IMG/VR virus record: IMGVR_UViG_3300024308_000302
Location: 1-64,000 of that record
Strand: one strand, 5' to 3'
DNA: 64,000 nt
A model generated the notes under the pieces. It saw only the letters and a list, made by a program, of their open reading frames with translations, did not search any database and was not told the origin of the DNA. Shown here piece after piece: positions 32,665 through 59,417 of this stretch; positions within the stretch are counted from its first letter, which is position 1, and every line of letters begins with the position of its first letter. The translations under genes and the position numbers were made by a program.

Positions 32665-32780
32665 AAGTAAGAACTCATTTGAATAGAGCTGAATTATAGC
32701 ATTATTTAAAAATCAAGGCAACAAAAAACCCCGTACATACGGGGCTTTTTTCTTTATTAAATTCTATGATTGGAGTTTAA

Positions 32781-32813
32781 TTAAGACTGCATCTTTAGTT
32801 CACCTCGGGCACT
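32781..32813 (-). other. minigene unit (GAGGTGA-7nt-ATG CAG TCT TAA)
   Basis: same core as the 58974-59417 array. Confidence 0.7.
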
Positions 32814-33773: not shown

Positions 33774-33850
33774 TGGTGGGACTTGCAGGACTTGAACCTG
33801 CGACCTGCCGATTATGAGTCGGATGCTCTAACCAACTGAGCTAAAGTCCC
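33774..33850 (-). tRNA. tRNA-Ile2: tRNA with CAT anticodon, Ile2 type (lysidine), CCA encoded
   Basis: full cloverleaf; CCGAC-TCATAAT-CGG arm resembles E. coli ileX more than Met tRNAs. Confidence 0.9.
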
Positions 33851-33938
33851 TTAGTGTGGTGATTTAGGACGCACTAAACCACCCAGTATCATCTAAATAG
33901 TATAATCTACATTATAAATTAAGTACCTGACAATCTAT

Positions 33939-34040
33939 TTCAAGCGATTTCCAATCTTTTTATTGAAATCCCTACTTTGGATTTACTTGTCTACCAAAGG
34001 TCTTAGGTTTTGCTTGAATCAACAGGATGTCAACCTGCTG
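33939..34040 (-). ncRNA. candidate structured RNA (three-way junction plus hairpin)
   Basis: three perfect helices; own promoter TTGTGT-17-TAAAAT at 34085-34113. Confidence 0.45.
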
Positions 34041-34166
34041 AAAAACTGTTTATCCTTTTGTTCGTTTATGTTTAAGAAGGTTCTATTTTAAGCCTTTTCA
34101 TTCATTTACACAAGTCTTTTTTTAATCTTTTTTTAAATCATCTTTTTTTTATCTTTGTTTTAAAAC

Positions 34167-34251
34167 TGGTGCCCGGAGCCGGACTCGAACCGGCACGGCT
34201 TTCGCCGGAAGATTTTAAGTCTTCTGTGTCTACCAATTTCACCATCCGGGC
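34167..34251 (-). tRNA. tRNA-Leu: tRNA-Leu(TAA), copy 1
   Basis: cloverleaf with long variable arm and CCA. Confidence 0.95.
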
Positions 34252-34394
34252 TTTTTAGTCTACTCTCGTCTTGATGTGGTAATTATATAGAAATCCACAT
34301 GGTAGGTCAAGCATATTTTTTAGAAAAAACCATTAATTTTCAATAATTTAAAAACAACAAAACCGCCAGATGGCGGTTCATGGATTAGAAAATT

Positions 34395-34817
34395 TTATTT
34401 TTTGTTATGCAAATCGTAAAGGAAAACCCCAGTAAATTCAATATCCATGCCAATCAAGTCTTTGAATTTATCAGAATCACCAGCAACTGCAGATTTCAGA
34501 AGAGTGATATGAGGAACATGCGGCAAATCTTCAACAATTCCGAAAGATTTGACTGCTTTGTTATAAAAATGACTCCAATCAGTACCTTCAAGTTCAGCAA
34601 CAATCATAACCTGACCGTTTGGATTCCATTCAGAAATCTTAGAAATGCGGCCAGACAAATTGCCATTTTCATTTTTTGGATAATAAGGAAGCTGAATATG
34701 TTTGATAGATCTCGAATGATCAAAAAAAACAGTCAAATGAAGGTTTGATTTAATGTCAAAATTGGAAAGAACAGCACCAGATTCTTTGGTTACTGGAGCA
34801 GCAAAATACATAGCCAT
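34395..34817 (-). CDS. 2H phosphoesterase, T4 gp57B/Acb1-like (candidate anti-CBASS nuclease)
   Basis: HLT and HIT 2H motifs; Y.AA N-terminus and EW...G...V..L pattern as in T4 57B; lies in the tRNA cluster as in T4. Confidence 0.75.
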   Translation of the reverse strand: MAMYFAAPVTKESGAVLSNFDIKSNLHLTVFFDHSRSIKHIQLPYYPKNENGNLSGRISKISEWNPNGQVMIVAELEGTDWSHFYNKAVKSFGIVEDLPHVPHITLLKSAVAGDSDKFKDLIGMDIEFTGVFLYDLHNKK

Positions 34818-34928
34818 AAACTTTTAACTCAAACGATATTTGATAACGCTAATTATACGTTAAATAAAGAAAAAGGACAATTAAAAAATGCTAGAATAGA
34901 AAAAGGCACTCTGAGTGCCTTTGATGGA

Positions 34929-35005
34929 TGGTGGGACTTGTAGGGTTTGAACCTACGACCTAACGATTATGAGTCGTCCGCTCTAACCAACTGAGCTAAA
35001 GTCCC
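34929..35005 (-). tRNA. tRNA-Ile2: tRNA-Ile2(CAT), copy 2
   Basis: cloverleaf with CCA; near-identical to copy 1. Confidence 0.9.
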
Positions 35006-35019
35006 ATTAAACAAGAATT

Positions 35020-35103
35020 TGGTGCCCGGTGCCAGACTCGAACTGGCACGGCTTTCGCCGGAAGATTTTAAGTCTTCTGTGTCTACCATTTCACCAACCG
35101 GGC
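35020..35103 (-). tRNA. tRNA-Leu: tRNA-Leu(TAA), copy 2
   Basis: cloverleaf with CCA. Confidence 0.95.
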
Positions 35104-35108
35104 GTAAA

Positions 35109-35295
35109 TTGAACAGTCCAGAACAGGCTCACATCGAGCAATCTCCGCCCTCCACGGACGGTGTTTTAAGCTTCATCCTTCGACTTTCCCAGTTTATGGC
35201 CACTCAACTGGTTCCATCTAAGACTATGCAACTCTCTAGTCAGCCTGCAGAGCCTTCCTTCAAGTTCCTTTAAACTACCGTTCTGGACTATTCAA
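35109..35295 (-). ncRNA. 187-nt structured RNA of unknown family
   Basis: 18-bp terminal helix and internal hairpins; GC-rich; lies between two tRNAs. Confidence 0.65.
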
Positions 35296-35312
35296 TCAAC
35301 AACAAATAAAGC

Positions 35313-35389
35313 TGGCGTCTGTGGCAGGACTCGAACCTGCGACCATCCGCTTAGAAGGCGGATGCTCTATCCAACTGAGCTACACACGG
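35313..35389 (-). tRNA. tRNA-Arg: tRNA-Arg(TCT) with unpaired acceptor-stem positions 1-3
   Basis: D, anticodon and T arms essentially as in the 36621 copy; 5' CCGTGTG vs 3' CACAGAC. Confidence 0.75.
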
Positions 35390-35399
35390 ATAAAGAAAA

Positions 35400-35477
35400 G
35401 GGTGCTCTTGGTAAGGATTTGAACCTACGACTTGTGGGTTTCCGCCCACAAACTCTACCAGACTGAGTTACAAGAGC
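35400..35477 (-). pseudogene. aberrant tRNA-like element (8-nt anticodon loop GCGGAAAC, bulged T stem, ends ACCC)
   Basis: 7-bp acceptor stem GCTCTTG/CAAGAGC, D arm and TTCAAAT loop intact. Confidence 0.65.
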
Positions 35478-35484
35478 GTGAAGC

Positions 35485-35610
35485 TTATTCTGCGTGACGG
35501 TTGCGGCGTTTATCACGCATTTGACGACTGATTTTGTTATCACTACGTTTGGCGTTATCTTTCGATTTGCCCGAGAATTTTTCCATAGTGTCGCGGTAAG
35601 AACCTTGCAT
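35485..35610 (-). CDS. 41-aa basic peptide, MQGS...RDKRRNRH family
   Basis: not in the ORF track; AAGGA SD; translated by hand. Confidence 0.8.
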   Translation of the reverse strand: MQGSYRDTMEKFSGKSKDNAKRSDNKISRQMRDKRRNRHAE

Positions 35611-35718
35611 TTGGTGTTTCCTTGTATGCTTCGTTTTGATGGGATAAGTATATCAACCATTGAACCCGTTAGCAACCATTTTTTTGAATATTTTTCGCTA
35701 TTTTTTCAAAAATTTAGG

Positions 35719-36060
35719 TCAATAGACAACATTTTTAATCACACCATCCAAACTGACAGATGATTCAGCATATCCACATGATTGAAGCAACCTGTTAACA
35801 TTAGCACGACTAAAGTTTTTTGGGAAACAATAATCTTTCCCTGTAATTAATGATCTTGCAACCCAAGGAAAATACTCACAAACAGAAGCATAAGTTTCAA
35901 CATTGTTAGCAAGTTCAGTGTATGAAGATGGTTTACGAGTTTGAAAAAGAATAACAGGTTCTGGTGGGCCTACAAGCAAGGGGAGATGATATAGAAAAAT
36001 AGGTGTTTCTACTTTTTTAGTAAAAATTTTTTTCATCAAATTAAAAATATTCATATTCAC
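35719..36060 (-). CDS. hypothetical protein
   Basis: ATGA overlap with the upstream ORF. Confidence 0.7.
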   Translation of the reverse strand: MNMNIFNLMKKIFTKKVETPIFLYHLPLLVGPPEPVILFQTRKPSSYTELANNVETYASVCEYFPWVARSLITGKDYCFPKNFSRANVNRLLQSCGYAESSVSLDGVIKNVVY

Positions 36061-36239
36061 CCTCTGAAATCAGTATGCTGATAGCAATAAAGTTGAAAAC
36101 CAGAAAGTTCACGGATAGTTTTGTTTTTTTCTTCAATAGTTTCACGAAGTCTTTTAATTTCGGCTTTCCAGCGAGCATTGTCATCTTCAAGAGATTTAAT
36201 GTATTCTGGGCTTTGATGATAAGGAATATCATTTTTCAT
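36057..36239 (-). CDS. small coiled-coil protein
   Basis: 60-aa ORF with own promoter. Confidence 0.65.
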   Translation of the reverse strand: MKNDIPYHQSPEYIKSLEDDNARWKAEIKRLRETIEEKNKTIRELSGFQLYCYQHTDFRG

Positions 36240-36357
36240 ATTCGTGAATCCAATTAATGTTAGACACTGATTATATCAAAAATAAAAATAAAAAACAACA
36301 AAAACCCCCTGCTGCGAGGGGGTTTTATTCTCATATAATTAAATTCTCTGATTTAGT

Positions 36358-36492
36358 TTAAAACTGCATCGGTAGTTCACCTCTGGCACTTTAATTAAAT
36401 TTTAAAAGTTTATGGGCAATCATCAATTATACTAAATTCAATAATAGGATTAAATTAAAGTTTATGCTGCATTATTGGCTCACCTCTGGCAC
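36358..36492 (-). repeat. two minigene units (MQHKL*, MQF*) 3' of tRNA-Leu
   Basis: GTGCCAGAGGTGA-7nt-ATG CAG core, twice. Confidence 0.75.
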
Positions 36493-36529
36493 ACTCATTA
36501 ATTATCAGTAGGTTTATCGTGGTTTAATT

Positions 36530-36614
36530 TGGTGCCCGGTGCCAGACTCGAACTGGCACGACTTTCGCCGGAAGATTTTAAGTCTTCTGTGTCTACCGAT
36601 TTCACCAACCGGGC
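36530..36614 (-). tRNA. tRNA-Leu: tRNA-Leu(TAA), copy 3
   Basis: cloverleaf with CCA. Confidence 0.95.
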
Positions 36615-36620
36615 ATAATT

Positions 36621-36697
36621 TGGCCCATGCGGCAGGATTCGAACCTGCGACCATCCGCTTAGAAGGCGGATGCTCTATCCAACTGAGCTACGCACGG
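36621..36697 (-). tRNA. tRNA-Arg: tRNA-Arg(TCT)
   Basis: fully paired cloverleaf with CCA. Confidence 0.95.
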
Positions 36698-36706
36698 ATG
36701 TTTGAG

Positions 36707-36835
36707 TTAAGCGTCTTGATGACGATTGCGGCGTTTATCACGGAATTGACGGTCTTTTTTTGCAAAATTGCGGGTTTCTTTGTCACGACCTTTAGAAGTG
36801 AATTTTTCGGTCATATCGTTGTGAGAACCTTGCAT
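36707..36835 (-). CDS. 42-aa basic peptide, MQGS...RDKRRNRH family
   Basis: AAGGA SD; leader motif; co-transcribed with tRNAs. Confidence 0.8.
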   Translation of the reverse strand: MQGSHNDMTEKFTSKGRDKETRNFAKKDRQFRDKRRNRHQDA

Positions 36836-36994
36836 TTCGTATTTCCTTGTATGTTTCGTTTTGATGGGTTCATTATAGAGAAATTGGTACTGCATGTAAA
36901 GCATTATTTTCAAATTTTCTTAAAAAAACACATGATATTTTTCTTGTATTTCACTGATTTTTAAAGAAAAAGAAAAGGGCCTTTCGGCCCTTAG

Positions 36995-37573
36995 TCAATC
37001 ATCGCTCACTTCATCATCATAGCATTCATAGTTTCGGATATAGTAGGTGAAAAGTTCTTCCAGAGAATCAAAATCTTTGTCTGGGTAGTTGCTACGCAGT
37101 GAGAACTTACCATCAGGAAGTGCATAAATGTAATGTTCCTGAGTAAAAATGTTAATAATTTTATTACCATCTTTGTCCATAGGTTTGAACAGTGGAATAA
37201 GATGCTTGAGGCCAGCAATGGATTTAGCATTGCGTTCAAGATCAAGTTTGTAGATAAAAACATCAACCGAACGTTGTTGGCTAAACGCACGATACCCCAT
37301 GCCATAAAGACCAAAAGATTCAATGAATTTTTGCGAAGCCGCATAACGAATCTTATCAGTCCCCGAACCAGATTCATGCATCAGAAAATCAAACCGTTCT
37401 TGTTCAGTCATATCCATCTTCAATGTTTCAATGGTGATGGATTCATTGAGAGAAGCAATCTCTTGACCAATAGAAGAAGCCTGATCTTGAAGTGGTTTGA
37501 TCTGCTCAAAAATATCATTACGCTGTGCTTTAAGTTCTTCACGGCGAGCAGTCAAAAGTGCAAGAGTAGTCAT
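36995..37573 (-). CDS. hypothetical protein with N-terminal coiled coil
   Basis: 192-aa ORF. Confidence 0.75.
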   Translation of the reverse strand: MTTLALLTARREELKAQRNDIFEQIKPLQDQASSIGQEIASLNESITIETLKMDMTEQERFDFLMHESGSGTDKIRYAASQKFIESFGLYGMGYRAFSQQRSVDVFIYKLDLERNAKSIAGLKHLIPLFKPMDKDGNKIINIFTQEHYIYALPDGKFSLRSNYPDKDFDSLEELFTYYIRNYECYDDEVSDD

Positions 37574-37644
37574 TAATATAGCCTCATTGAATTTGAATCA
37601 ATTATACATAAAAGACAGTGCCAAAGCAACCTAAAAATAAGATT

Positions 37645-37839
37645 TTAAGGGATGCCATTCAAAAAATCTTTAATACGAGATTCTGCATCAGCACGATAAA
37701 TGTACCCAGATCGACAAGAACCACGAGGCCAATGAGTGATGAAGGTATTGCAAGGACGCCACCAGAACAGCCATTTATATTCGCAAATATAAACTTTTTT
37801 ACCATCATCACGAACCGCTTCACGAATACGAGTTTGCAT
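37645..37839 (-). CDS. small hypothetical protein
   Basis: AAGGGA SD. Confidence 0.65.
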   Translation of the reverse strand: MQTRIREAVRDDGKKVYICEYKWLFWWRPCNTFITHWPRGSCRSGYIYRADAESRIKDFLNGIP

Positions 37840-37848
37840 ACAATTCCC

Positions 37849-38031
37849 TTATTCGTAAACTACCAGATCCCAAGTAACATATTCATGATCTGAACAAGAA
37901 CTGTTACGTTCAAGTACACCATTTTTAACATTTTTGGTACGTTCAACAAAATTACGAAGCTCATCAAGTGATAGAGAATCACGATCATGCATAATACCAA
38001 TTGAATCAACTACAGTACGTTTTTTATCCAT
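37849..38031 (-). CDS. small hypothetical protein
   Basis: GAGGTG SD. Confidence 0.7.
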   Translation of the reverse strand: MDKKRTVVDSIGIMHDRDSLSLDELRNFVERTKNVKNGVLERNSSCSDHEYVTWDLVVYE

Positions 38032-38093
38032 AAATCACCTCAAAAATAGTTCAAATGGAAAGCCATTATAAACAAAATACAACGAAAAGACAA

Positions 38094-38486
38094 CTATTCT
38101 TCTAGCACAAAAATACAAGCAAGTTTATCATCAGGATGCAAAGTATCGCCCCAAGCATCTTCATTATCAAAATGTTTGACATTTTTCTTTTTCAAGAGGG
38201 CATGAAGTTCAGTAAAATTGAATGAATATTTTTTATCCAATTCAGGCTCAATACAAAATTGCTGACCATCAAAATTGTAGATGAAAAAATAATTTGGCTT
38301 AACTGCAACAAAACGAATAGTCCAAAAATTTTCTTCTTTCACTGGCTCATCACGATGAGGATCAACCTCTGTCATATAGCAATATTCAACACCGTCAATT
38401 GTGAACTTTTCTGTGTAAGCAGACGCTTTAACACGCTTGCAACGTTCTTTGATGGCTTTGACAATTTCTGGATGATTAGTAAGCAT
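38094..38486 (-). CDS. putative HxD...H protein, paralog of 33229
   Basis: PHRD...YSFNF...HAL. Confidence 0.55.
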   Translation of the reverse strand: MLTNHPEIVKAIKERCKRVKASAYTEKFTIDGVEYCYMTEVDPHRDEPVKEENFWTIRFVAVKPNYFFIYNFDGQQFCIEPELDKKYSFNFTELHALLKKKNVKHFDNEDAWGDTLHPDDKLACIFVLEE

Positions 38487-38574
38487 GGTGAATACCAGTA
38501 ATTTGCAAGAAGATGATTATATCAAAAATAAGAAAATATGAAAAGCATCTTAATGAACAAGATGCTTAGAATAA

Positions 38575-38856
38575 TTAACTCTCGTTAATGAAAAAAGAAA
38601 CTCCAGTTTTGGGATAAAAAGTAGACTTCCAAAGATCACCATGTATATTGCCACCATCAAAAATGATGATTTCATAAATATGATGTTCATCAATAAGTTT
38701 TAGCAAAGAATCATAACTAACAGATTCCATATGTAGTTTAGAATCAACATTTTTAATAACGTAAGCATGGCCAACTGCATCATCAGATAGCATAGAATTG
38801 ATAGCAATGCCAAGATTACTCATGTAATCATCTGAATAAGTGATAGATTTTTGCAT
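38575..38856 (-). CDS. hypothetical protein
   Basis: start at MQKSIT (GGAG SD). Confidence 0.7.
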   Translation of the reverse strand: MQKSITYSDDYMSNLGIAINSMLSDDAVGHAYVIKNVDSKLHMESVSYDSLLKLIDEHHIYEIIIFDGGNIHGDLWKSTFYPKTGVSFFINES

Positions 38857-38939
38857 ACAATCTCCAAGATTATGATAAGAATAGAAGTTTATTATAGCAA
38901 ATATAAAAACAAAACTCAACTTATTTAAAGCAATAAAAA

Positions 38940-38957
38940 AACCACCCGAAGGTGGTT
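38940..38957 (-). terminator. terminator, AACCACCCGAAGGTGGTT family
   Basis: UUCG hairpin plus U-tract; copies at about 39637, 55615 and 57497. Confidence 0.85.
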
Positions 38958-38962
38958 AATTA

Positions 38963-39559
38963 TTAAGCAGCAAGTAATTCTTTTCTTCGTATTCCACAAG
39001 CAATTGCATTATCGATTGCTTGAGACTTGTAAGTCTCTAAATCATATATTTTATACATTTCATGAAAGTTTAAATAACACATTTGATAACAAGGATAAAA
39101 TGTAACTCGAAGATCATTTCCACAAATAAAGTTAATATAAGTTAGTAAATCGTCAAGTACAGAAGTAAAGCAATATTCAAAGGAAATTTCAGTAGATTGA
39201 ATAGTATTTAAATAATCCTTATTATGAAGATGATAAGAATGACTTTTACAAAGAGAAAGAATGTGATTTTCAAGAGACATAGCACGAAGCTTTGAAATAT
39301 CAGGATCTTTTGTGATAATTTTGAATAGATGAACAAAATTAATATTACTATCTTTAAATTTTTGTTTTAGAGCAGAAACTCTGCTACCGAAAGTAGAAGA
39401 ATGACCTATTTTAATAACACCATTTTTGAGACGCAATACATAAACAAAGTGAATATAATCTTTAGTGTTTCCATCCATTTCTTTAGAATGCATACGTCTT
39501 GGATCAACACAAGAATAGTTAGAAATAAAGAGTTTAGATCTGCGATGAAAAGCATACAT
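38963..39559 (-). CDS. GIY-YIG/T5orf172-like nuclease-domain protein
   Basis: FVYVLRLKNGVIKIGHS...R...L and a downstream E..IL. Confidence 0.6.
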   Translation of the reverse strand: MYAFHRRSKLFISNYSCVDPRRMHSKEMDGNTKDYIHFVYVLRLKNGVIKIGHSSTFGSRVSALKQKFKDSNINFVHLFKIITKDPDISKLRAMSLENHILSLCKSHSYHLHNKDYLNTIQSTEISFEYCFTSVLDDLLTYINFICGNDLRVTFYPCYQMCYLNFHEMYKIYDLETYKSQAIDNAIACGIRRKELLAA

Positions 39560-39659
39560 AAATATAAAATCTCATTTTTCAAGTTTAATAATTATATCAA
39601 AAATAAGCTCAATGGTAAAGCAAAAACAATAAAAAAACCACCCGAAGGTGGTTTGTGTT

Positions 39660-39826
39660 TGGTAGCTGTTGATGGGGTCGAACCACCAAGTTAGGACTAT
39701 TTCACAAGCTTCAGAGTACGTGCAATCTCGTCCGACAAGTTATTTCATCTTCACTCCGCTTCCACATCCACGGCTCTTGGTGTCTGCACGTATGACACCT
39801 CCTTCCGATCCAGTTTAGCAACAGCC
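39660..39826 (-). ncRNA. 167-nt tRNA-like RNA (acceptor stem, T arm, CCA) with internal pseudoknot, SD and short ORF
   Basis: GGCTGTT/AACAGCT-A-CCA; GGTGG-TTCGACC-CCATC; GGTGTC/GACACC and TACGTGCA/TGCACGTA. Confidence 0.8.
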
Positions 39827-39840
39827 ATAAATCTTAAATA

Positions 39841-39924
39841 TGGTGCGGAAAGCGGGACTCGAACCCGCACGCCTTGCGACACTGGCTTCTAAGACCAGCA
39901 CGTCTACCATTTCGTCACTTCCGC
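39841..39924 (-). tRNA. tRNA-Leu: tRNA-Leu(TAG)
   Basis: cloverleaf with long variable arm and CCA. Confidence 0.95.
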
Positions 39925-39931
39925 ATAAAAT

Positions 39932-40045
39932 CAAAGTGGTCTACTCTATTTATTTTAGCACCGAGTAGTATTCCATACTTTCAAGCTATATTGGCAACCG
40001 AAGCTGTTATTCCAAAACAAACCACTTGAAAGAAGTGCTAAGTTA
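39932..40045 (-). ncRNA. candidate structured leader RNA (pseudoknot plus cUUCGg hairpin)
   Basis: two crossing 7-bp helices; CAGC-TTCG-GTTG; AGTAT-GGA-ATACT. Confidence 0.45.
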
Positions 40046-40142
40046 TTGCTGCAAGATTTTGTATCTCCGTTTCGTCTTGTGGGCCTATTATAGTGTAATG
40101 CAAGGTAACCGTCAAGCTTTTTTACTTCTTTTAGAACAAATT

Positions 40143-40227
40143 TGGTGCCCAAAGTCGGACTCGAACCGACACTCCTTTCGGAAGCGGATTTTGAATCCGC
40201 CGCGTCTACCAATTTCACCATATGGGC
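40143..40227 (-). tRNA. tRNA-Leu: tRNA-Leu(CAA)
   Basis: cloverleaf with CCA. Confidence 0.95.
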
Positions 40228-58741: not shown

Positions 58742-58759
58742 AGCCACCCGAAGGTGGCT
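58742..58759 (-). terminator. terminator closing the minigene-array transcript
   Basis: GAGCCACC-TTCG-GGTGGC-TT plus U-tract. Confidence 0.85.
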
Positions 58760-58973
58760 CTTTATCTGAATTCTTCACAAGGCGGCATGATAAATGTGCC
58801 ATTTAATGAAAACCTTGCTCCAATCGCACCACTCTTTATATATATGAGATCTGCAAGATGCGATTCACTTCACTCATATCCACAACAGCTAAGTTCAGTT
58901 AAGGGGGCCTGTCGTGGTCAGCCATCACCTTAAATACATCATCATAATTAATCAAATATAAAATAATTAGAAG

Positions 58974-59417
58974 TTAGTTCTGCATCGGCGGTTCACCTCC
59001 CGGCACCCAATTAATTAGTAGGGGTTAATCGGCAATCTTAATCAAATTAATAGTTTCAAAATTATATAAGTTAGTCAACTTACTGCATCGGTAGCTCACC
59101 TCTGGCACTCAATTAAGTAGTGTGGAAGTCAAATTTGTTTCTAAGATTAATCAATAATAGGTTATCAAATTAACTTAGTACGGCATTGCTAGCTCACCTC
59201 CGGGCACTTCATTAAGAGTATCAATCGGTTTATAAAAAAGGTATTGCAATCAAATATTCTAAATTAATCAAGTCTATAATTTAAGTTCAATGCTGCATGG
59301 GTAGCTCACCTCGGGCACTTGCATTAATGTGTTCGGTTTAGGCTATTCTAACAAATTAATCAATAAAATAAAAGTTTTAATTTACTGAGTTTTACATTTT
59401 TAGCTCACCTCTGCACT
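58974..59417 (-). repeat. array of five approximately 100-nt units, each a strong-SD minigene (M*, MQH*, MPY*, MQ*, MQN*)
   Basis: core (A/G)GTGC(C)N0-2GAGGTGA-N7-ATG; ATG-to-ATG periods of 99, 112, 98 and 103 nt. Confidence 0.85.

What the first reader, a model, noticed from the sequence alone, without database searches (positions are those of the whole stretch)
36358..36492. Two more minigene units co-transcribed directly behind tRNA-Leu(UAA)
Seen in sequence: after the CCA of the 36530 tRNA come GTGCCAGAGGTGA-gccaata-ATG CAG CAT AAA CTT TAA (36455-36472) and GTGCCAGAGGTGA-actaccg-ATG CAG TTT TAA (36358-36369), 103 nt apart, then a terminator. The period and core match the 59-kb array 22 kb away. 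Inference: the units are mobile or amplifiable modules, and RNase P/E processing of the tRNA operon could release them as small RNAs.
Basis: partly seen in the sequence, partly recalled or inferred. Interest (0 to 1): 0.72.

Follow-up and report, generated by a model that had tools for sequence, protein, structure and literature searches.

The report
Ribosome-trapping minigenes behind phage tRNA genes
Two tiny "start, one or two codons, stop" genes with an unusually strong ribosome-binding site sit behind a tRNA gene. They belong to a conserved, undescribed family of such modules in a group of very large AT-rich phage-like genomes and probably act by capturing host ribosomes, not by making a protein.

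Summary
On the minus strand, 37 nt after the CCA of tRNA-Leu(UAA) (36530-36614), lie two units 103 nt apart. Each is GTGCC-N-GAGGTGA, exactly 7 nt, ATG, CAG, 1-3 more codons, then TAA. An intrinsic terminator follows (36301-36326), and no terminator lies between the tRNA and the units.

The unit occurs 10 times in the 290-kb record: a 5-unit array at 59 kb, one unit at 32.8 kb and two at 183.8 kb. No real gene there uses GAGGTGA-N7-ATG.

Related huge AT-rich viral and metagenome contigs raise the count to 40 distinct units:
- All have 1-3 sense codons, with one exception of 5.
- Codon 2 always ends in G (CAG in 25 of 37).
- The stop is TAA in 35 of 40.

In unrelated viruses the same string starts real genes in 84% of cases. 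The tRNA-Leu/unit/unit/terminator module recurs in other contigs, and arrays change by whole units.

I conclude these are selected ribosome-engaging minigenes carried on tRNA or non-coding transcripts. Their nearest analogues are the lambda bar minigenes and CreT RNA toxins. Action in trans on translation, and release by tRNA processing, are inferred. No decisive transcription or ribosome data were obtainable.

The parts
36872..36900 (-). Sigma-70-type promoter (TTTACA, 17 nt, TATAAT; 11 of 12) of the operon that ends with the two units
   Evidence: The upstream gene's terminator lies at 36975-36992.
36710..36835 (-). 42-codon ORF for a very basic peptide, first gene of the operon
   Evidence: Translation. 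No Pfam hit. A 94%-identical paralogue lies at 169.5 kb.
36621..36697 (-). tRNA-Arg(UCU)
36530..36614 (-). tRNA-Leu(UAA) with encoded CCA
36455..36492 (-). Minigene unit 1: GTGCC box, GAGGTGA Shine-Dalgarno (36480-36486), 7-nt spacer, ATG CAG CAT AAA CTT TAA
   Evidence: Orthologous units in L201, L205 and L207 read ATG CAG CAC/CAT TAA.
36390..36454 (-). AU-rich inter-unit spacer with a conserved block (TTAATCCTATTATTGAATTTAGTATA)
   Evidence: Alignment of four copies of the module.
36358..36389 (-). Minigene unit 2: GTGCC box, GAGGTGA (36377-36383), 7-nt spacer, ATG CAG TTT TAA
36301..36326 (-). Intrinsic terminator closing the operon. It would also form the 3' hairpin of any released unit RNA.
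   Evidence: Stem changes are compensated in the orthologous modules.
32781..32812 (-). Solitary unit (ATG CAG TCT TAA) in the 3' UTR of a 111-codon gene, followed by a terminator at about 32729-32744
   Evidence: Unit plus terminator is about 73% identical to unit 2 plus its terminator.
58974..59416 (-). Five-unit minigene array: ATG TAA; ATG CAG CAT TGA; ATG CCG TAC TAA; ATG CAG TAA; ATG CAG AAC TAA
59454..59482 (-). Dedicated promoter of the array (TTTACA, 17 nt, TATTAT with TG), followed by the leader CACATCAAGACGAGA. The tRNA-operon promoters share this leader.
58742..58973 (-). 3' domain of the array transcript plus its terminator hairpin (58742-58759)
   Evidence: A partly homologous 3' hairpin domain follows the arrays in G001, G002, G003 and G005.

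Best explanation
The two units belong to a conserved family of ribosome-engaging minigene modules.

Anatomy:
- Each unit has a 7-8-nt perfect Shine-Dalgarno (GAGGTGA or GGAGGTGA), a fixed 7-nt spacer and an AUG.
- A codon ending in G follows (usually CAG), then none or one further codon, then UAA.
- An intrinsic-terminator hairpin lies downstream.

Here the units form the 3' trailer of a host-RNA-polymerase-transcribed operon: small ORF, tRNA-Arg, tRNA-Leu, unit, unit, terminator. Elsewhere the same units form stand-alone arrays with their own strong promoter.

Most likely mechanism (inferred):
- tRNA processing frees the trailer as a roughly 230-nt RNA stabilised by the terminator hairpin.
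- Each unit then captures a host ribosome, which makes fMet, fMet-Gln or a tripeptide, terminates or drops the peptidyl-tRNA, and can re-initiate on the same strong site.
- Expressed from several loci, the units would act in trans on the translation apparatus, tying up ribosomes, initiator and elongator tRNAs, release factors and peptidyl-tRNA hydrolase. This is how lambda bar minigenes and CreT RNA toxins work.

Shown: the anatomy, its conservation, its selection for shortness and its placement in tRNA/non-coding transcription units. Inferred: transcription, processing, translation and the effect on the host.
For: 1. The ribosome-binding site is exceptional. GAGGTGA-N7-ATG occurs 10 times in 290 kb, only in units, and never before one of about 400 real genes, which use weaker AGGA/GGAG sites.
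2. The spacing is invariant at 7 nt in 39 of 40 distinct units, which points to precise AUG placement in the P site.
3. Shortness is selected.
   - The 40 distinct units have 1 (3 units), 2 (14), 3 (22) or 5 (1) sense codons. They use 10 different third codons, and the stop sits at different positions.
   - Only 13-18% of random ATGs in this genome open an ORF of 3 codons or fewer.
4. Controls: in unrelated viral contigs CNGAGGTGA-N7-ATGCAG opens an ORF of 30 or more codons in 93 of 111 cases, and GTGCCNGAGGTGA-N7-ATG behaves likewise.
5. The core is nearly identical across lineages whose flanking proteins share only 23-57% identity.
6. Arrays have their own consensus promoter, a conserved leader, a 3' hairpin domain and a terminator in G000, G001, G002, G003 and G005. 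They therefore look like genes for an RNA, which favours a trans-acting product.
7. The tRNA-Leu(UAA)/unit/unit/terminator module is conserved in L201 (twice) and L205. Units also follow or separate tRNAs in L203, L207, L212, L214, L215 and L217.
8. No conserved secondary structure covers the SD-AUG region.
9. Codon 2 (CAG, CCG, AAG, GAG) is atypical for the element's own genes. CAG is 22% of Gln codons, CCG 5% of Pro codons, and CAG is the second codon in 1 of 404 genes.
10. Literature:
   - Peptidyl-tRNA drop-off and on-message ribosome recycling rise as minigenes shorten from 8 to 2 codons (PMC2490762).
   - SD plus mini-ORF plus hairpin is the required architecture of CreT RNA toxins (bioRxiv 10.64898/2026.06.02.729485).
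11. Hint of abundance: the 59-kb array is held at 0.70-0.75 of sampled words in four very small wastewater RNA-seq runs. The 4.5-kb tRNA region is held at only 0.13-0.18.
Against: - There is no direct evidence of transcription, processing, ribosome binding or toxicity. RNA-library contigs over the two units are at depth about 3, no higher than neighbouring genes.
- Stop contexts look efficient: UAA in 35 of 40 units, followed by U in 20 and G in 10. That fits fast termination better than stalling.
- A general drain on translation would also hurt the element's own genes, and no peptidyl-tRNA hydrolase gene was found in the record.
- Predicted accessibility of the SD in single-sequence folds is only average.
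- The conserved GTGCC box and the invariant G at the third position of codon 2 are not explained by this model.
- The host is unknown, so it cannot be checked whether these codons are abundant or rare in the host.
Confidence: 0.45

Rival explanations
1. The units are cis-acting ribosome landing pads. A ribosome bound and briefly cycling on the unit shields otherwise untranslated tRNA or non-coding transcripts from RNase E scanning or 3' exonucleases. Alternatively it shields them from Rho, or keeps RNA polymerase coupled to a ribosome. The early stop simply prevents the ribosome from running into tRNAs or melting the terminator.
For: - Units are recurrently embedded in tRNA operons, after and between tRNAs, and in a 3' UTR.
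- Stop contexts look efficient, which suits a harmless bind-and-release design.
- In arrays the units precede a conserved 3' hairpin domain that could be the protected cargo.
- From my own knowledge: ribosome-binding stabilisers such as the cryIIIA STAB-SD element, and ribosome obstacles to RNase E scanning, are established.
Against: - At 36.4 kb and 32.8 kb only a terminator lies downstream of the units, so there is no 3' cargo to protect. The terminator hairpin already blocks 3' exonucleases.
- The 94%-identical tRNA module at 169 kb does without units.
- Most of the 35 tRNAs have none.
- A pure stabiliser needs no AUG at fixed spacing, no conserved NNG codon and no GTGCC box.
- The spacers are AU-rich and C-poor, hence poor Rho-loading sites.
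Confidence: 0.25
2. The conserved 27-nt core is a recognition site for a factor encoded by the element, or a DNA-level signal, and its likeness to a start site is secondary. Candidate factors are a translational repressor, a processing endonuclease in the manner of T4 RegB cutting at GGAG, or another RNA-binding protein. Candidate DNA-level signals are a promoter or a recombination linker for shuffling tRNA modules.
For: - The GTGCC box, and the partly conserved spacer (GCTACCG), are conserved without any role in Shine-Dalgarno pairing.
- AT-rich TTAAT/TTAGAT boxes lie just upstream of each core.
- Unit-length deletions with breakpoints inside cores show that cores do act as recombination substrates.
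- DNA-run joints show that the tRNA region is rearranged between repeats.
Against: - A recombination linker or protein site does not explain why the variable sequence after the ATG always reaches a stop within 1-3 codons, nor the strict strand bias with transcription.
- Promoter-like hexamers upstream of units are at chance level and are not conserved among orthologous modules.
- No candidate binding protein was identified.
Confidence: 0.12
3. The units are decoy substrates or sensors for ribosome-dependent mRNA endonucleases of the RelE/YoeB type. An initiating ribosome displays an NNG codon (mostly CAG), or a UAA, in an empty A site. From my own knowledge, this is the class of codon RelE cuts best, and YoeB cuts just after start codons. 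The unit RNA could absorb such defence toxins or report their activity.
For: Codon 2 ends in G in 37 of 37 units, is CAG in 25, and is otherwise directly UAA. This regularity is unexplained by the other models.
Against: - These toxins are catalytic, so stoichiometric decoying is inefficient.
- No toxin or antitoxin partner was looked for or found.
- The codon preference of RelE is recalled from memory and was not checked here.
- AAG, GAG and CCG are not known to me as preferred sites.
Confidence: 0.06
4. The units are functionless debris: truncated gene starts or tRNA-derived fragments copied along with tRNA and terminator cassettes.
For: - The tRNA region is highly duplicated.
- GTGCCAG equals the 5' strand of the T stem of the neighbouring tRNA-Leu, and GCCCGG..GGTGA resembles its 5' end.
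Against: - The core is near-identical across lineages whose proteins have diverged to 23-57% identity.
- There are 40 distinct units with maintained spacing and shortness.
- Arrays have dedicated promoters.
- The unit profile HMM does not hit any tRNA gene.
- No real gene in the record carries this start region.
Confidence: 0.03

Closest known systems
Bacteriophage lambda bar minigenes (barI, barII)
   Same: Both are phage-borne, two-codon ORFs behind a Shine-Dalgarno-like sequence. Both are transcribed as part of longer RNAs and make no useful protein. Bar minigenes work by peptidyl-tRNA drop-off and tRNA starvation, which is strongest for 2-3-codon minigenes (PMC2490762 and the references in it).
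   Different: - Bar is AUG AUA stop. Here codon 2 is CAG, CCG, AAG or GAG.
- The SD here is a 7-8-nt perfect match with a fixed 7-nt spacer, and a conserved GTGCC box precedes it.
- The units are multi-copy, in tandem arrays with their own promoter or in tRNA operon trailers.
- The units are conserved across a clade, which implies an adaptive role. No such role has been established for bar.
CreT small RNA toxins of CRISPR-regulated toxin-antitoxin (CreTA) modules
   Same: The architecture matches: SD, then a mini-ORF of a few codons, then a GC-rich hairpin, all three of which are required for CreT toxicity. CreT inhibits translation in trans as an RNA (bioRxiv 10.64898/2026.06.02.729485). Units at 36358-36389 and 32781-32812 have exactly this layout, with the terminator as the hairpin.
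   Different: - CreT relies on two consecutive rare Arg codons or two Pro codons. The units have no consecutive rare or Pro codons.
- CreT is chromosomal, single-copy and repressed by a CreA-guided Cas complex. The units sit in a phage-like genome, are multi-copy and are driven by constitutive-looking promoters with no CRISPR context seen.
RtT RNA and the 178-bp repeats behind tyrT in E. coli, and the 3' external transcribed spacer of the glyW-cysT-leuZ tRNA operon (my own knowledge)
   Same: All are repeated or functional RNA segments in the 3' trailer of a tRNA operon. In those known cases the segment is released by processing of the tRNA precursor and acts as a small RNA. One of them also lies behind a tRNA-Leu.
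   Different: - There is no sequence or Rfam match here.
- Those RNAs act by base-pairing, sponging small RNAs or unknown means, not through SD-AUG-stop modules.
Start-stop elements and ribosome-binding RNA stabilisers such as the cryIIIA STAB-SD (my own knowledge)
   Same: All use a strong SD, with or without an AUG directly followed by a stop, to hold a ribosome on an RNA without making protein. Three units are literal AUG-UAA start-stops.
   Different: - STAB-SD needs no start codon and sits near a 5' end, protecting downstream message.
- Known bacterial start-stops are single regulatory sites upstream of a gene.
- Here there is no downstream gene and the units are arrayed.

Membership tests
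Lambda bar-type toxic minigenes | SD-like sequence, AUG, very few sense codons, then a stop | tested here: met
   40 of 40 distinct units. Sense codons number 1 (3 units), 2 (14), 3 (22) and 5 (1).
Lambda bar-type toxic minigenes | Sequence AUG AUA UAA/UGA, with homology to bar | tested here: not met
   Codon 2 is CAG, CCG, AAG or GAG. No unit has AUA.
Lambda bar-type toxic minigenes | Expression causes peptidyl-tRNA accumulation and growth arrest when Pth is limiting | not testable with these tools
   This needs expression in pth(Ts) and wild-type cells and measurement of peptidyl-tRNA.
CreT RNA toxins (CreTA) | SD plus mini-ORF plus downstream stabilising hairpin on a small RNA | tested here: met
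   Units at 36358-36389 and 32781-32812 are followed after about 30-40 nt by GC-rich terminator hairpins. Arrays end in a hairpin domain plus a terminator.
CreT RNA toxins (CreTA) | Two consecutive rare (Arg) or Pro codons that stall ribosomes or sequester a tRNA | tested here: not met
   No unit has tandem identical, rare or Pro-Pro codons.
CreT RNA toxins (CreTA) | Adjacent CreA guide and CRISPR-Cas locus that repress the toxin promoter | not tested
   No CRISPR-like array appears among the window's tandem repeats. Cas genes and CreA were not searched for.
RtT RNA (Rfam RF00391) and any other Rfam family | Match to the covariance model at the gathering score | tested here: not met
   Only tRNAs pass in the whole window. 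Nothing credible appears at E up to 5 over the array.
tRNA 3'-trailer-derived small RNAs (3'ETS type) | Lies between the last tRNA and the operon terminator with no intervening terminator | tested here: met
   The same layout occurs in L201 (twice) and L205.
tRNA 3'-trailer-derived small RNAs (3'ETS type) | Released by RNase E/RNase P processing and accumulates as a discrete RNA | tested here: inconclusive
   RNA-library contigs cover 36334-36492 at depth about 3, without direction or ends. Only contigs, not reads, were available.
Real protein-coding gene start | The RBS-ATG opens an ORF of normal length | tested here: not met
   ORFs have 1-5 codons. The same string in unrelated viruses opens 30 or more codons in 93 of 111 cases.

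The most novel reading that the evidence does not exclude
A clade of huge AT-rich phage-like elements encodes an RNA-only host-takeover weapon. It consists of multi-copy SD-AUG-NNG-UAA minigenes, expressed early from consensus promoters and from tRNA operon trailers. These would trap host ribosomes in futile 1-3-codon cycles and sequester particular host tRNAs (Gln-CUG, Pro-CGG) that the element's own AT-rich genes hardly use, while its 35 tRNA genes keep its own translation supplied. It would be the viral counterpart of bacterial CreT toxins.
Probability: 0.25. Interest if true: 0.85.

Novelty: new variant of a known kind. Interest (0 to 1): 0.68.

Why it matters
Toxic minigenes have been known since lambda bar, but mostly as a laboratory curiosity, and CreT showed only recently that cells weaponise them. 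A conserved, multi-copy, promoter-equipped minigene family would show that selection maintains minigenes in viruses, and would point to an RNA-based way of manipulating host translation. It is tied to tRNA operons in a lineage with an extravagant tRNA set.

The units are short, sharply defined and easy to test by toeprinting, cell-free translation or expression with and without extra Pth. They are invisible to gene callers and to Rfam, so they are a class of feature that annotation currently misses.

Tried and rejected
- **Rfam.** Only tRNAs pass the gathering score in the whole window. At E up to 5 over the array only chance-level hits to terminator-like families appear.
- **Conserved RNA structure.** RNAalifold gives no pairs. 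A hand-drawn 4-5-bp helix between GUGC and the G-Y-A-Y after codon 2 holds in some units only and would close a loop of about 24 nt, so I do not claim it. Single-sequence folds show only average SD accessibility.
- **Internal promoters.** Hexamers upstream of units are at chance level and not conserved among orthologous modules.
- **tRNA origin of the unit.** GTGCCAG equals the tRNA-Leu T-stem strand and GCCCGG..GGTGA resembles its 5' end. The unit profile does not hit any tRNA, so this stays an unproven lead.
- **Extended complementarity to the 16S 3' end beyond GAGGTGA.** The spacer is not conserved, so I dropped it.
- **Isolated phages and cellular genomes.** Megablast and blastn find only tRNAs and terminators. 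tblastn of the largest ORF finds nothing. The strict pattern is absent from species-representative bacterial and archaeal genomes.
- **Identity and host.**
  - Pfam and PHROGs give almost nothing for the 14 largest ORFs: one virion-protein domain, one transposase and one HNH endonuclease.
  - No Gp23, Terminase_6N, ribosomal S21 or Pth was found.
  - The host remains unknown.
- **Alternative genetic code.** ORF statistics give no reason to invoke one, so none was used.
- **Reads.** Only assembled contigs of runs were available. They neither prove nor disprove transcription.

Full report
**What is there.** All features below lie on the minus strand.
- A consensus-like promoter (TTTACA, 17 nt, TATAAT; 36872-36900) follows the terminator of the preceding gene.
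- It drives a 42-codon ORF for a very basic peptide (36710-36835).
- tRNA-Arg(UCU) (36621-36697) and tRNA-Leu(UAA) (36530-36614, CCA encoded) come next.
- Unit 1 starts 37 nt later: GTGCCAGAGGTGA, 7 nt, then ATG CAG CAT AAA CTT TAA (36455-36492).
- Unit 2 lies 103 nt further on: the same 13-mer, 7 nt, then ATG CAG TTT TAA (36358-36389).
- A 10-bp GC-rich hairpin with a T run follows (36301-36326).
- No terminator-like site lies between the tRNA and the units.

**More than chance.**
- The 13-mer with up to 2 mismatches occurs 5 times in the window, against 0.52 expected.
- In the whole 290,157-bp record (32% GC), GAGGTGA-N5-9-ATG occurs exactly 10 times. All copies are on the minus strand, all have a 7-nt spacer, and all open ORFs of 1-5 codons.
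- The 10 copies are a five-unit array (58974-59416), a solitary unit (32781-32812), the two units of the finding, and two units at 183.7-183.95 kb.
- A profile HMM recovers these 10 and nothing else.
- None of about 400 crude gene calls uses this site. Real genes use AGGA/GGAG-type sites, and CAG is their second codon in 1 of 404 cases.
- Only 13-18% of random ATGs in this genome open an ORF of 3 codons or fewer, whereas 9 of the 10 units do. The units are paralogues, so the formal P values overstate independence. However, the stop sits at different positions and follows different codons, so shortness has been kept through sequence change.

**Relatives.**
- Pattern scans of IMG/VR found the unit only in five other large, 32-33% GC records, G001-G005 of 152-437 kb.
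- A metagenome scan added contigs of 0.44-1.86 Mb.
- The strict pattern is absent from species-representative bacterial and archaeal genomes, and the array has no blastn match in isolated phages.
- Pooling gives 40 distinct units:

| Property | Counts among the 40 distinct units |
|---|---|
| Sense codons | 1 (3 units), 2 (14), 3 (22), 5 (1) |
| Codon 2 | CAG 25, CCG 7, AAG 3, GAG 2; always NNG. The other three units are AUG-UAA start-stops. |
| Stop codon | TAA 35, TAG 3, TGA 2 |
| Base after the stop | T 20, G 10, A 6, C 4 |

- Controls:
  - In unrelated viral contigs CNGAGGTGA-N7-ATGCAG opens 30 or more codons in 93 of 111 hits.
  - GTGCC-N-(G)GAGGTGA-N7-ATG behaves the same way outside the family.
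- Proteins flanking the arrays share only 23-57% identity with G000, yet the 27-nt cores are almost identical. This indicates strong purifying selection.

**Two genomic contexts.**

(a) Stand-alone arrays.
- In G000, G001, G002, G003 and G005 a consensus-type promoter comes first.
- A conserved leader follows, then 2-5 units about 100-113 nt apart, a hairpin-forming 3' domain and a terminator.
- In G000 the leader CACATCAAGACGAGA is shared with the promoters of two tRNA operons (34287, 126841) and one gene (18485). The array is therefore probably expressed together with the tRNAs by host RNA polymerase.

(b) tRNA operons.
- The exact layout of the finding recurs twice in L201 and once in L205: tRNA-Leu(UAA), about 40 nt, unit with spacer GCCAATA, conserved spacer, second unit, terminator.
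- In those copies the cores are identical, the third codons vary (unit 2 reads CAG TTT, CCG CAT, CAG CTA or CAG-stop) and the terminator stems show compensated changes.
- The orthologues of unit 1 read ATG CAG CAC/CAT TAA. A variant contig in RNA run X19 appears to read the same, by my reconstruction from the listed indels. The window's 5-codon version therefore looks like a recent 1-nt slip.
- Units also follow or separate tRNAs in L203, L207, L212, L214, L215 and L217.

**Modularity.**
- G003's array is G001's minus exactly one 113-nt unit, with the breakpoints inside the core and every other base of the array identical.
- A 94%-identical copy of the promoter/small-ORF/tRNA-Arg/tRNA-Leu module at 169.3-169.7 kb loses homology right after the CCA and runs into a protein gene instead.
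- Unit 2 plus its terminator is about 73% identical to the 32.8-kb unit plus its terminator.

The units are therefore gained, lost and amplified by homologous recombination. Nothing suggests autonomous mobility.

**Expression data.** Only assembled contigs of public runs could be laid.
- A DNA run carries 35354-36555 on one contig at 100% identity.
- Three wastewater RNA libraries cover 32.5-38.4 kb patchily (depth 0-20). The two units are covered only in X19, at depth about 3, similar to nearby genes. This neither shows nor excludes transcription.
- Four very small RNA libraries of that study hold 70-75% of the sampled words of the 59-kb array. X18 and X19 hold only 13-18% of the words of the 4.5-kb tRNA region. 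This is a weak hint that the array RNA is abundant.

**Interpretation.**
- The features under selection are those that matter to a ribosome: a 7-8-nt perfect anti-SD match, exact spacing, an AUG and an almost immediate UAA.
- They are not those of a folded RNA, a promoter or a protein-coding gene.
- Arrays with their own promoter and terminator argue for a trans-acting RNA product.
- The closest known things are the lambda bar minigenes and CreT RNA toxins.
  - Drop-off of peptidyl-tRNA and ribosome recycling on the same message are maximal for 2-3-codon minigenes (PMC2490762).
  - SD, mini-ORF and hairpin are all required for CreT toxicity (bioRxiv 10.64898/2026.06.02.729485).
- I therefore favour, at about 0.45, ribosome-capturing minigenes that load the translation apparatus in trans. 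The trailer copy would be freed by tRNA processing and stabilised by the terminator hairpin.
- The main rival, at about 0.25, is a cis-acting landing pad that protects or couples untranslated tRNA and non-coding transcripts. It fits the tRNA association and the efficient stop contexts. It does not fit the 3'-terminal position, where no cargo lies downstream, nor the unit-less paralogue.
- No model explains the GTGCC box or the invariant G at the end of codon 2.

**Membership.** The units meet the structural definition of a minigene and the CreT layout. They fail the sequence-specific criteria of both: AUA for bar, and tandem rare or Pro codons plus CRISPR control for CreT. They match no Rfam family. 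They are best filed as a new variant of the minigene or mini-ORF RNA kind, not as a member of either named family.

**Caveat on identity.**
- The record is classed by IMG/VR as a provirus, 96% complete by CheckV.
- Pieces identical to it lie on a 1,539,155-bp metagenome contig.
- Its largest ORF has 633 codons, and most large ORFs have no Pfam or PHROG match.
- 'Phage' is thus a working label. It rests on one virion-protein domain, HNH and transposase genes, 35 redundant tRNAs and CheckV. The host is unknown.

Noticed in passing
Whole record G000; loci L206, L209, L216: The 290-kb 'provirus' record is part of a 1,539,155-bp metagenome contig. Related units lie on contigs of 1.86 Mb, 678 kb, 498 kb and 437 kb, and the 1.86-Mb contig carries units at four or more separate loci. 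These could be host-flanked proviruses, concatenated relatives or very large replicons. The records could not be searched.
   Followed up: partly
G000 179840-179914 and 180849-180923 (outside the window): There are two tRNAs with anticodon CUA (amber suppressors), and TAG is the rarest stop (25 of 404 crude genes, against 285 TAA and 94 TGA). This may mean stop-codon suppression or stage-specific recoding. ORF statistics gave no reason to apply another code.
   Followed up: partly
Window 33774-40227 and G000 168-184 kb: The tRNA set is extremely redundant: 35 genes, including about 11 tRNA-Leu(UAA), 5 tRNA-Arg(UCU) and 7 tRNA-Met(CAU), in duplicated modules. Two have odd anticodon loops (35401-35477; 163041-163117). 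DNA-run contigs show joints between the repeats, which implies strain-level rearrangement.
   Followed up: partly
Window 36710-36835 (minus strand); paralogue at G000 about 169490-169615: A 42-residue, highly basic ORF (starts MQGSHNDM, rich in K and R) is the first cistron of the tRNA-Arg/tRNA-Leu operon. It is conserved at 94% nucleotide identity in the second copy and has no Pfam hit.
   Followed up: partly
Window 33886-34166 (minus strand): The spacer between tRNA-Leu(UAA) and tRNA-Met has the highest depth of the 5.9-kb stretch in all three RNA libraries (6-20). It ends in a hairpin (GGGTGGTTTAG...CTAAATCACCAC) that resembles the 3' domain of the arrays. It may be a further non-coding RNA.
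   Followed up: no
L005 700-1010, which is G000 183.7-184.0 kb (minus strand): A consensus promoter drives unit, two 8-codon acidic ORFs (MKEEFDDI, MKDEHDDL) with good SDs, a second unit, a GC-rich structured stretch of about 100 nt, tRNA-Arg(UCU) and a terminator. This is another mixed mini-ORF/non-coding-RNA/tRNA operon.
   Followed up: no
Window 18485, 34287, 59459; G000 126841 (minus strand): Four near-consensus sigma-70 promoters are followed by the same initial transcribed sequence, CACATCAAGACGAGA. A similar leader precedes the arrays of G002 and G005. It may be a shared 5' leader or processing signal.
   Followed up: partly
Window 36480-36492 compared with 36545-36551: The unit's GTGCCAG heptamer is identical to the 5' strand of the T stem of the adjacent tRNA-Leu(UAA). 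It could therefore pair with the tRNA's CUGGCAC in the precursor. Some units (GCCCGGAGGTGA) also resemble the tRNA's 5' end (GCCCGGTTGGTGA). The similarity is not significant by profile search.
   Followed up: partly
Arrays in L013, L009, L007, L158: The conserved 3' domain after the arrays (GGTG[C/T]GG, a loop holding AAGTG[A/G]CAATTTAACG, then CCTCCACC) contains a CCUCC anti-SD-like core inside a hairpin stem. It is tandemly duplicated in G005.
   Followed up: no
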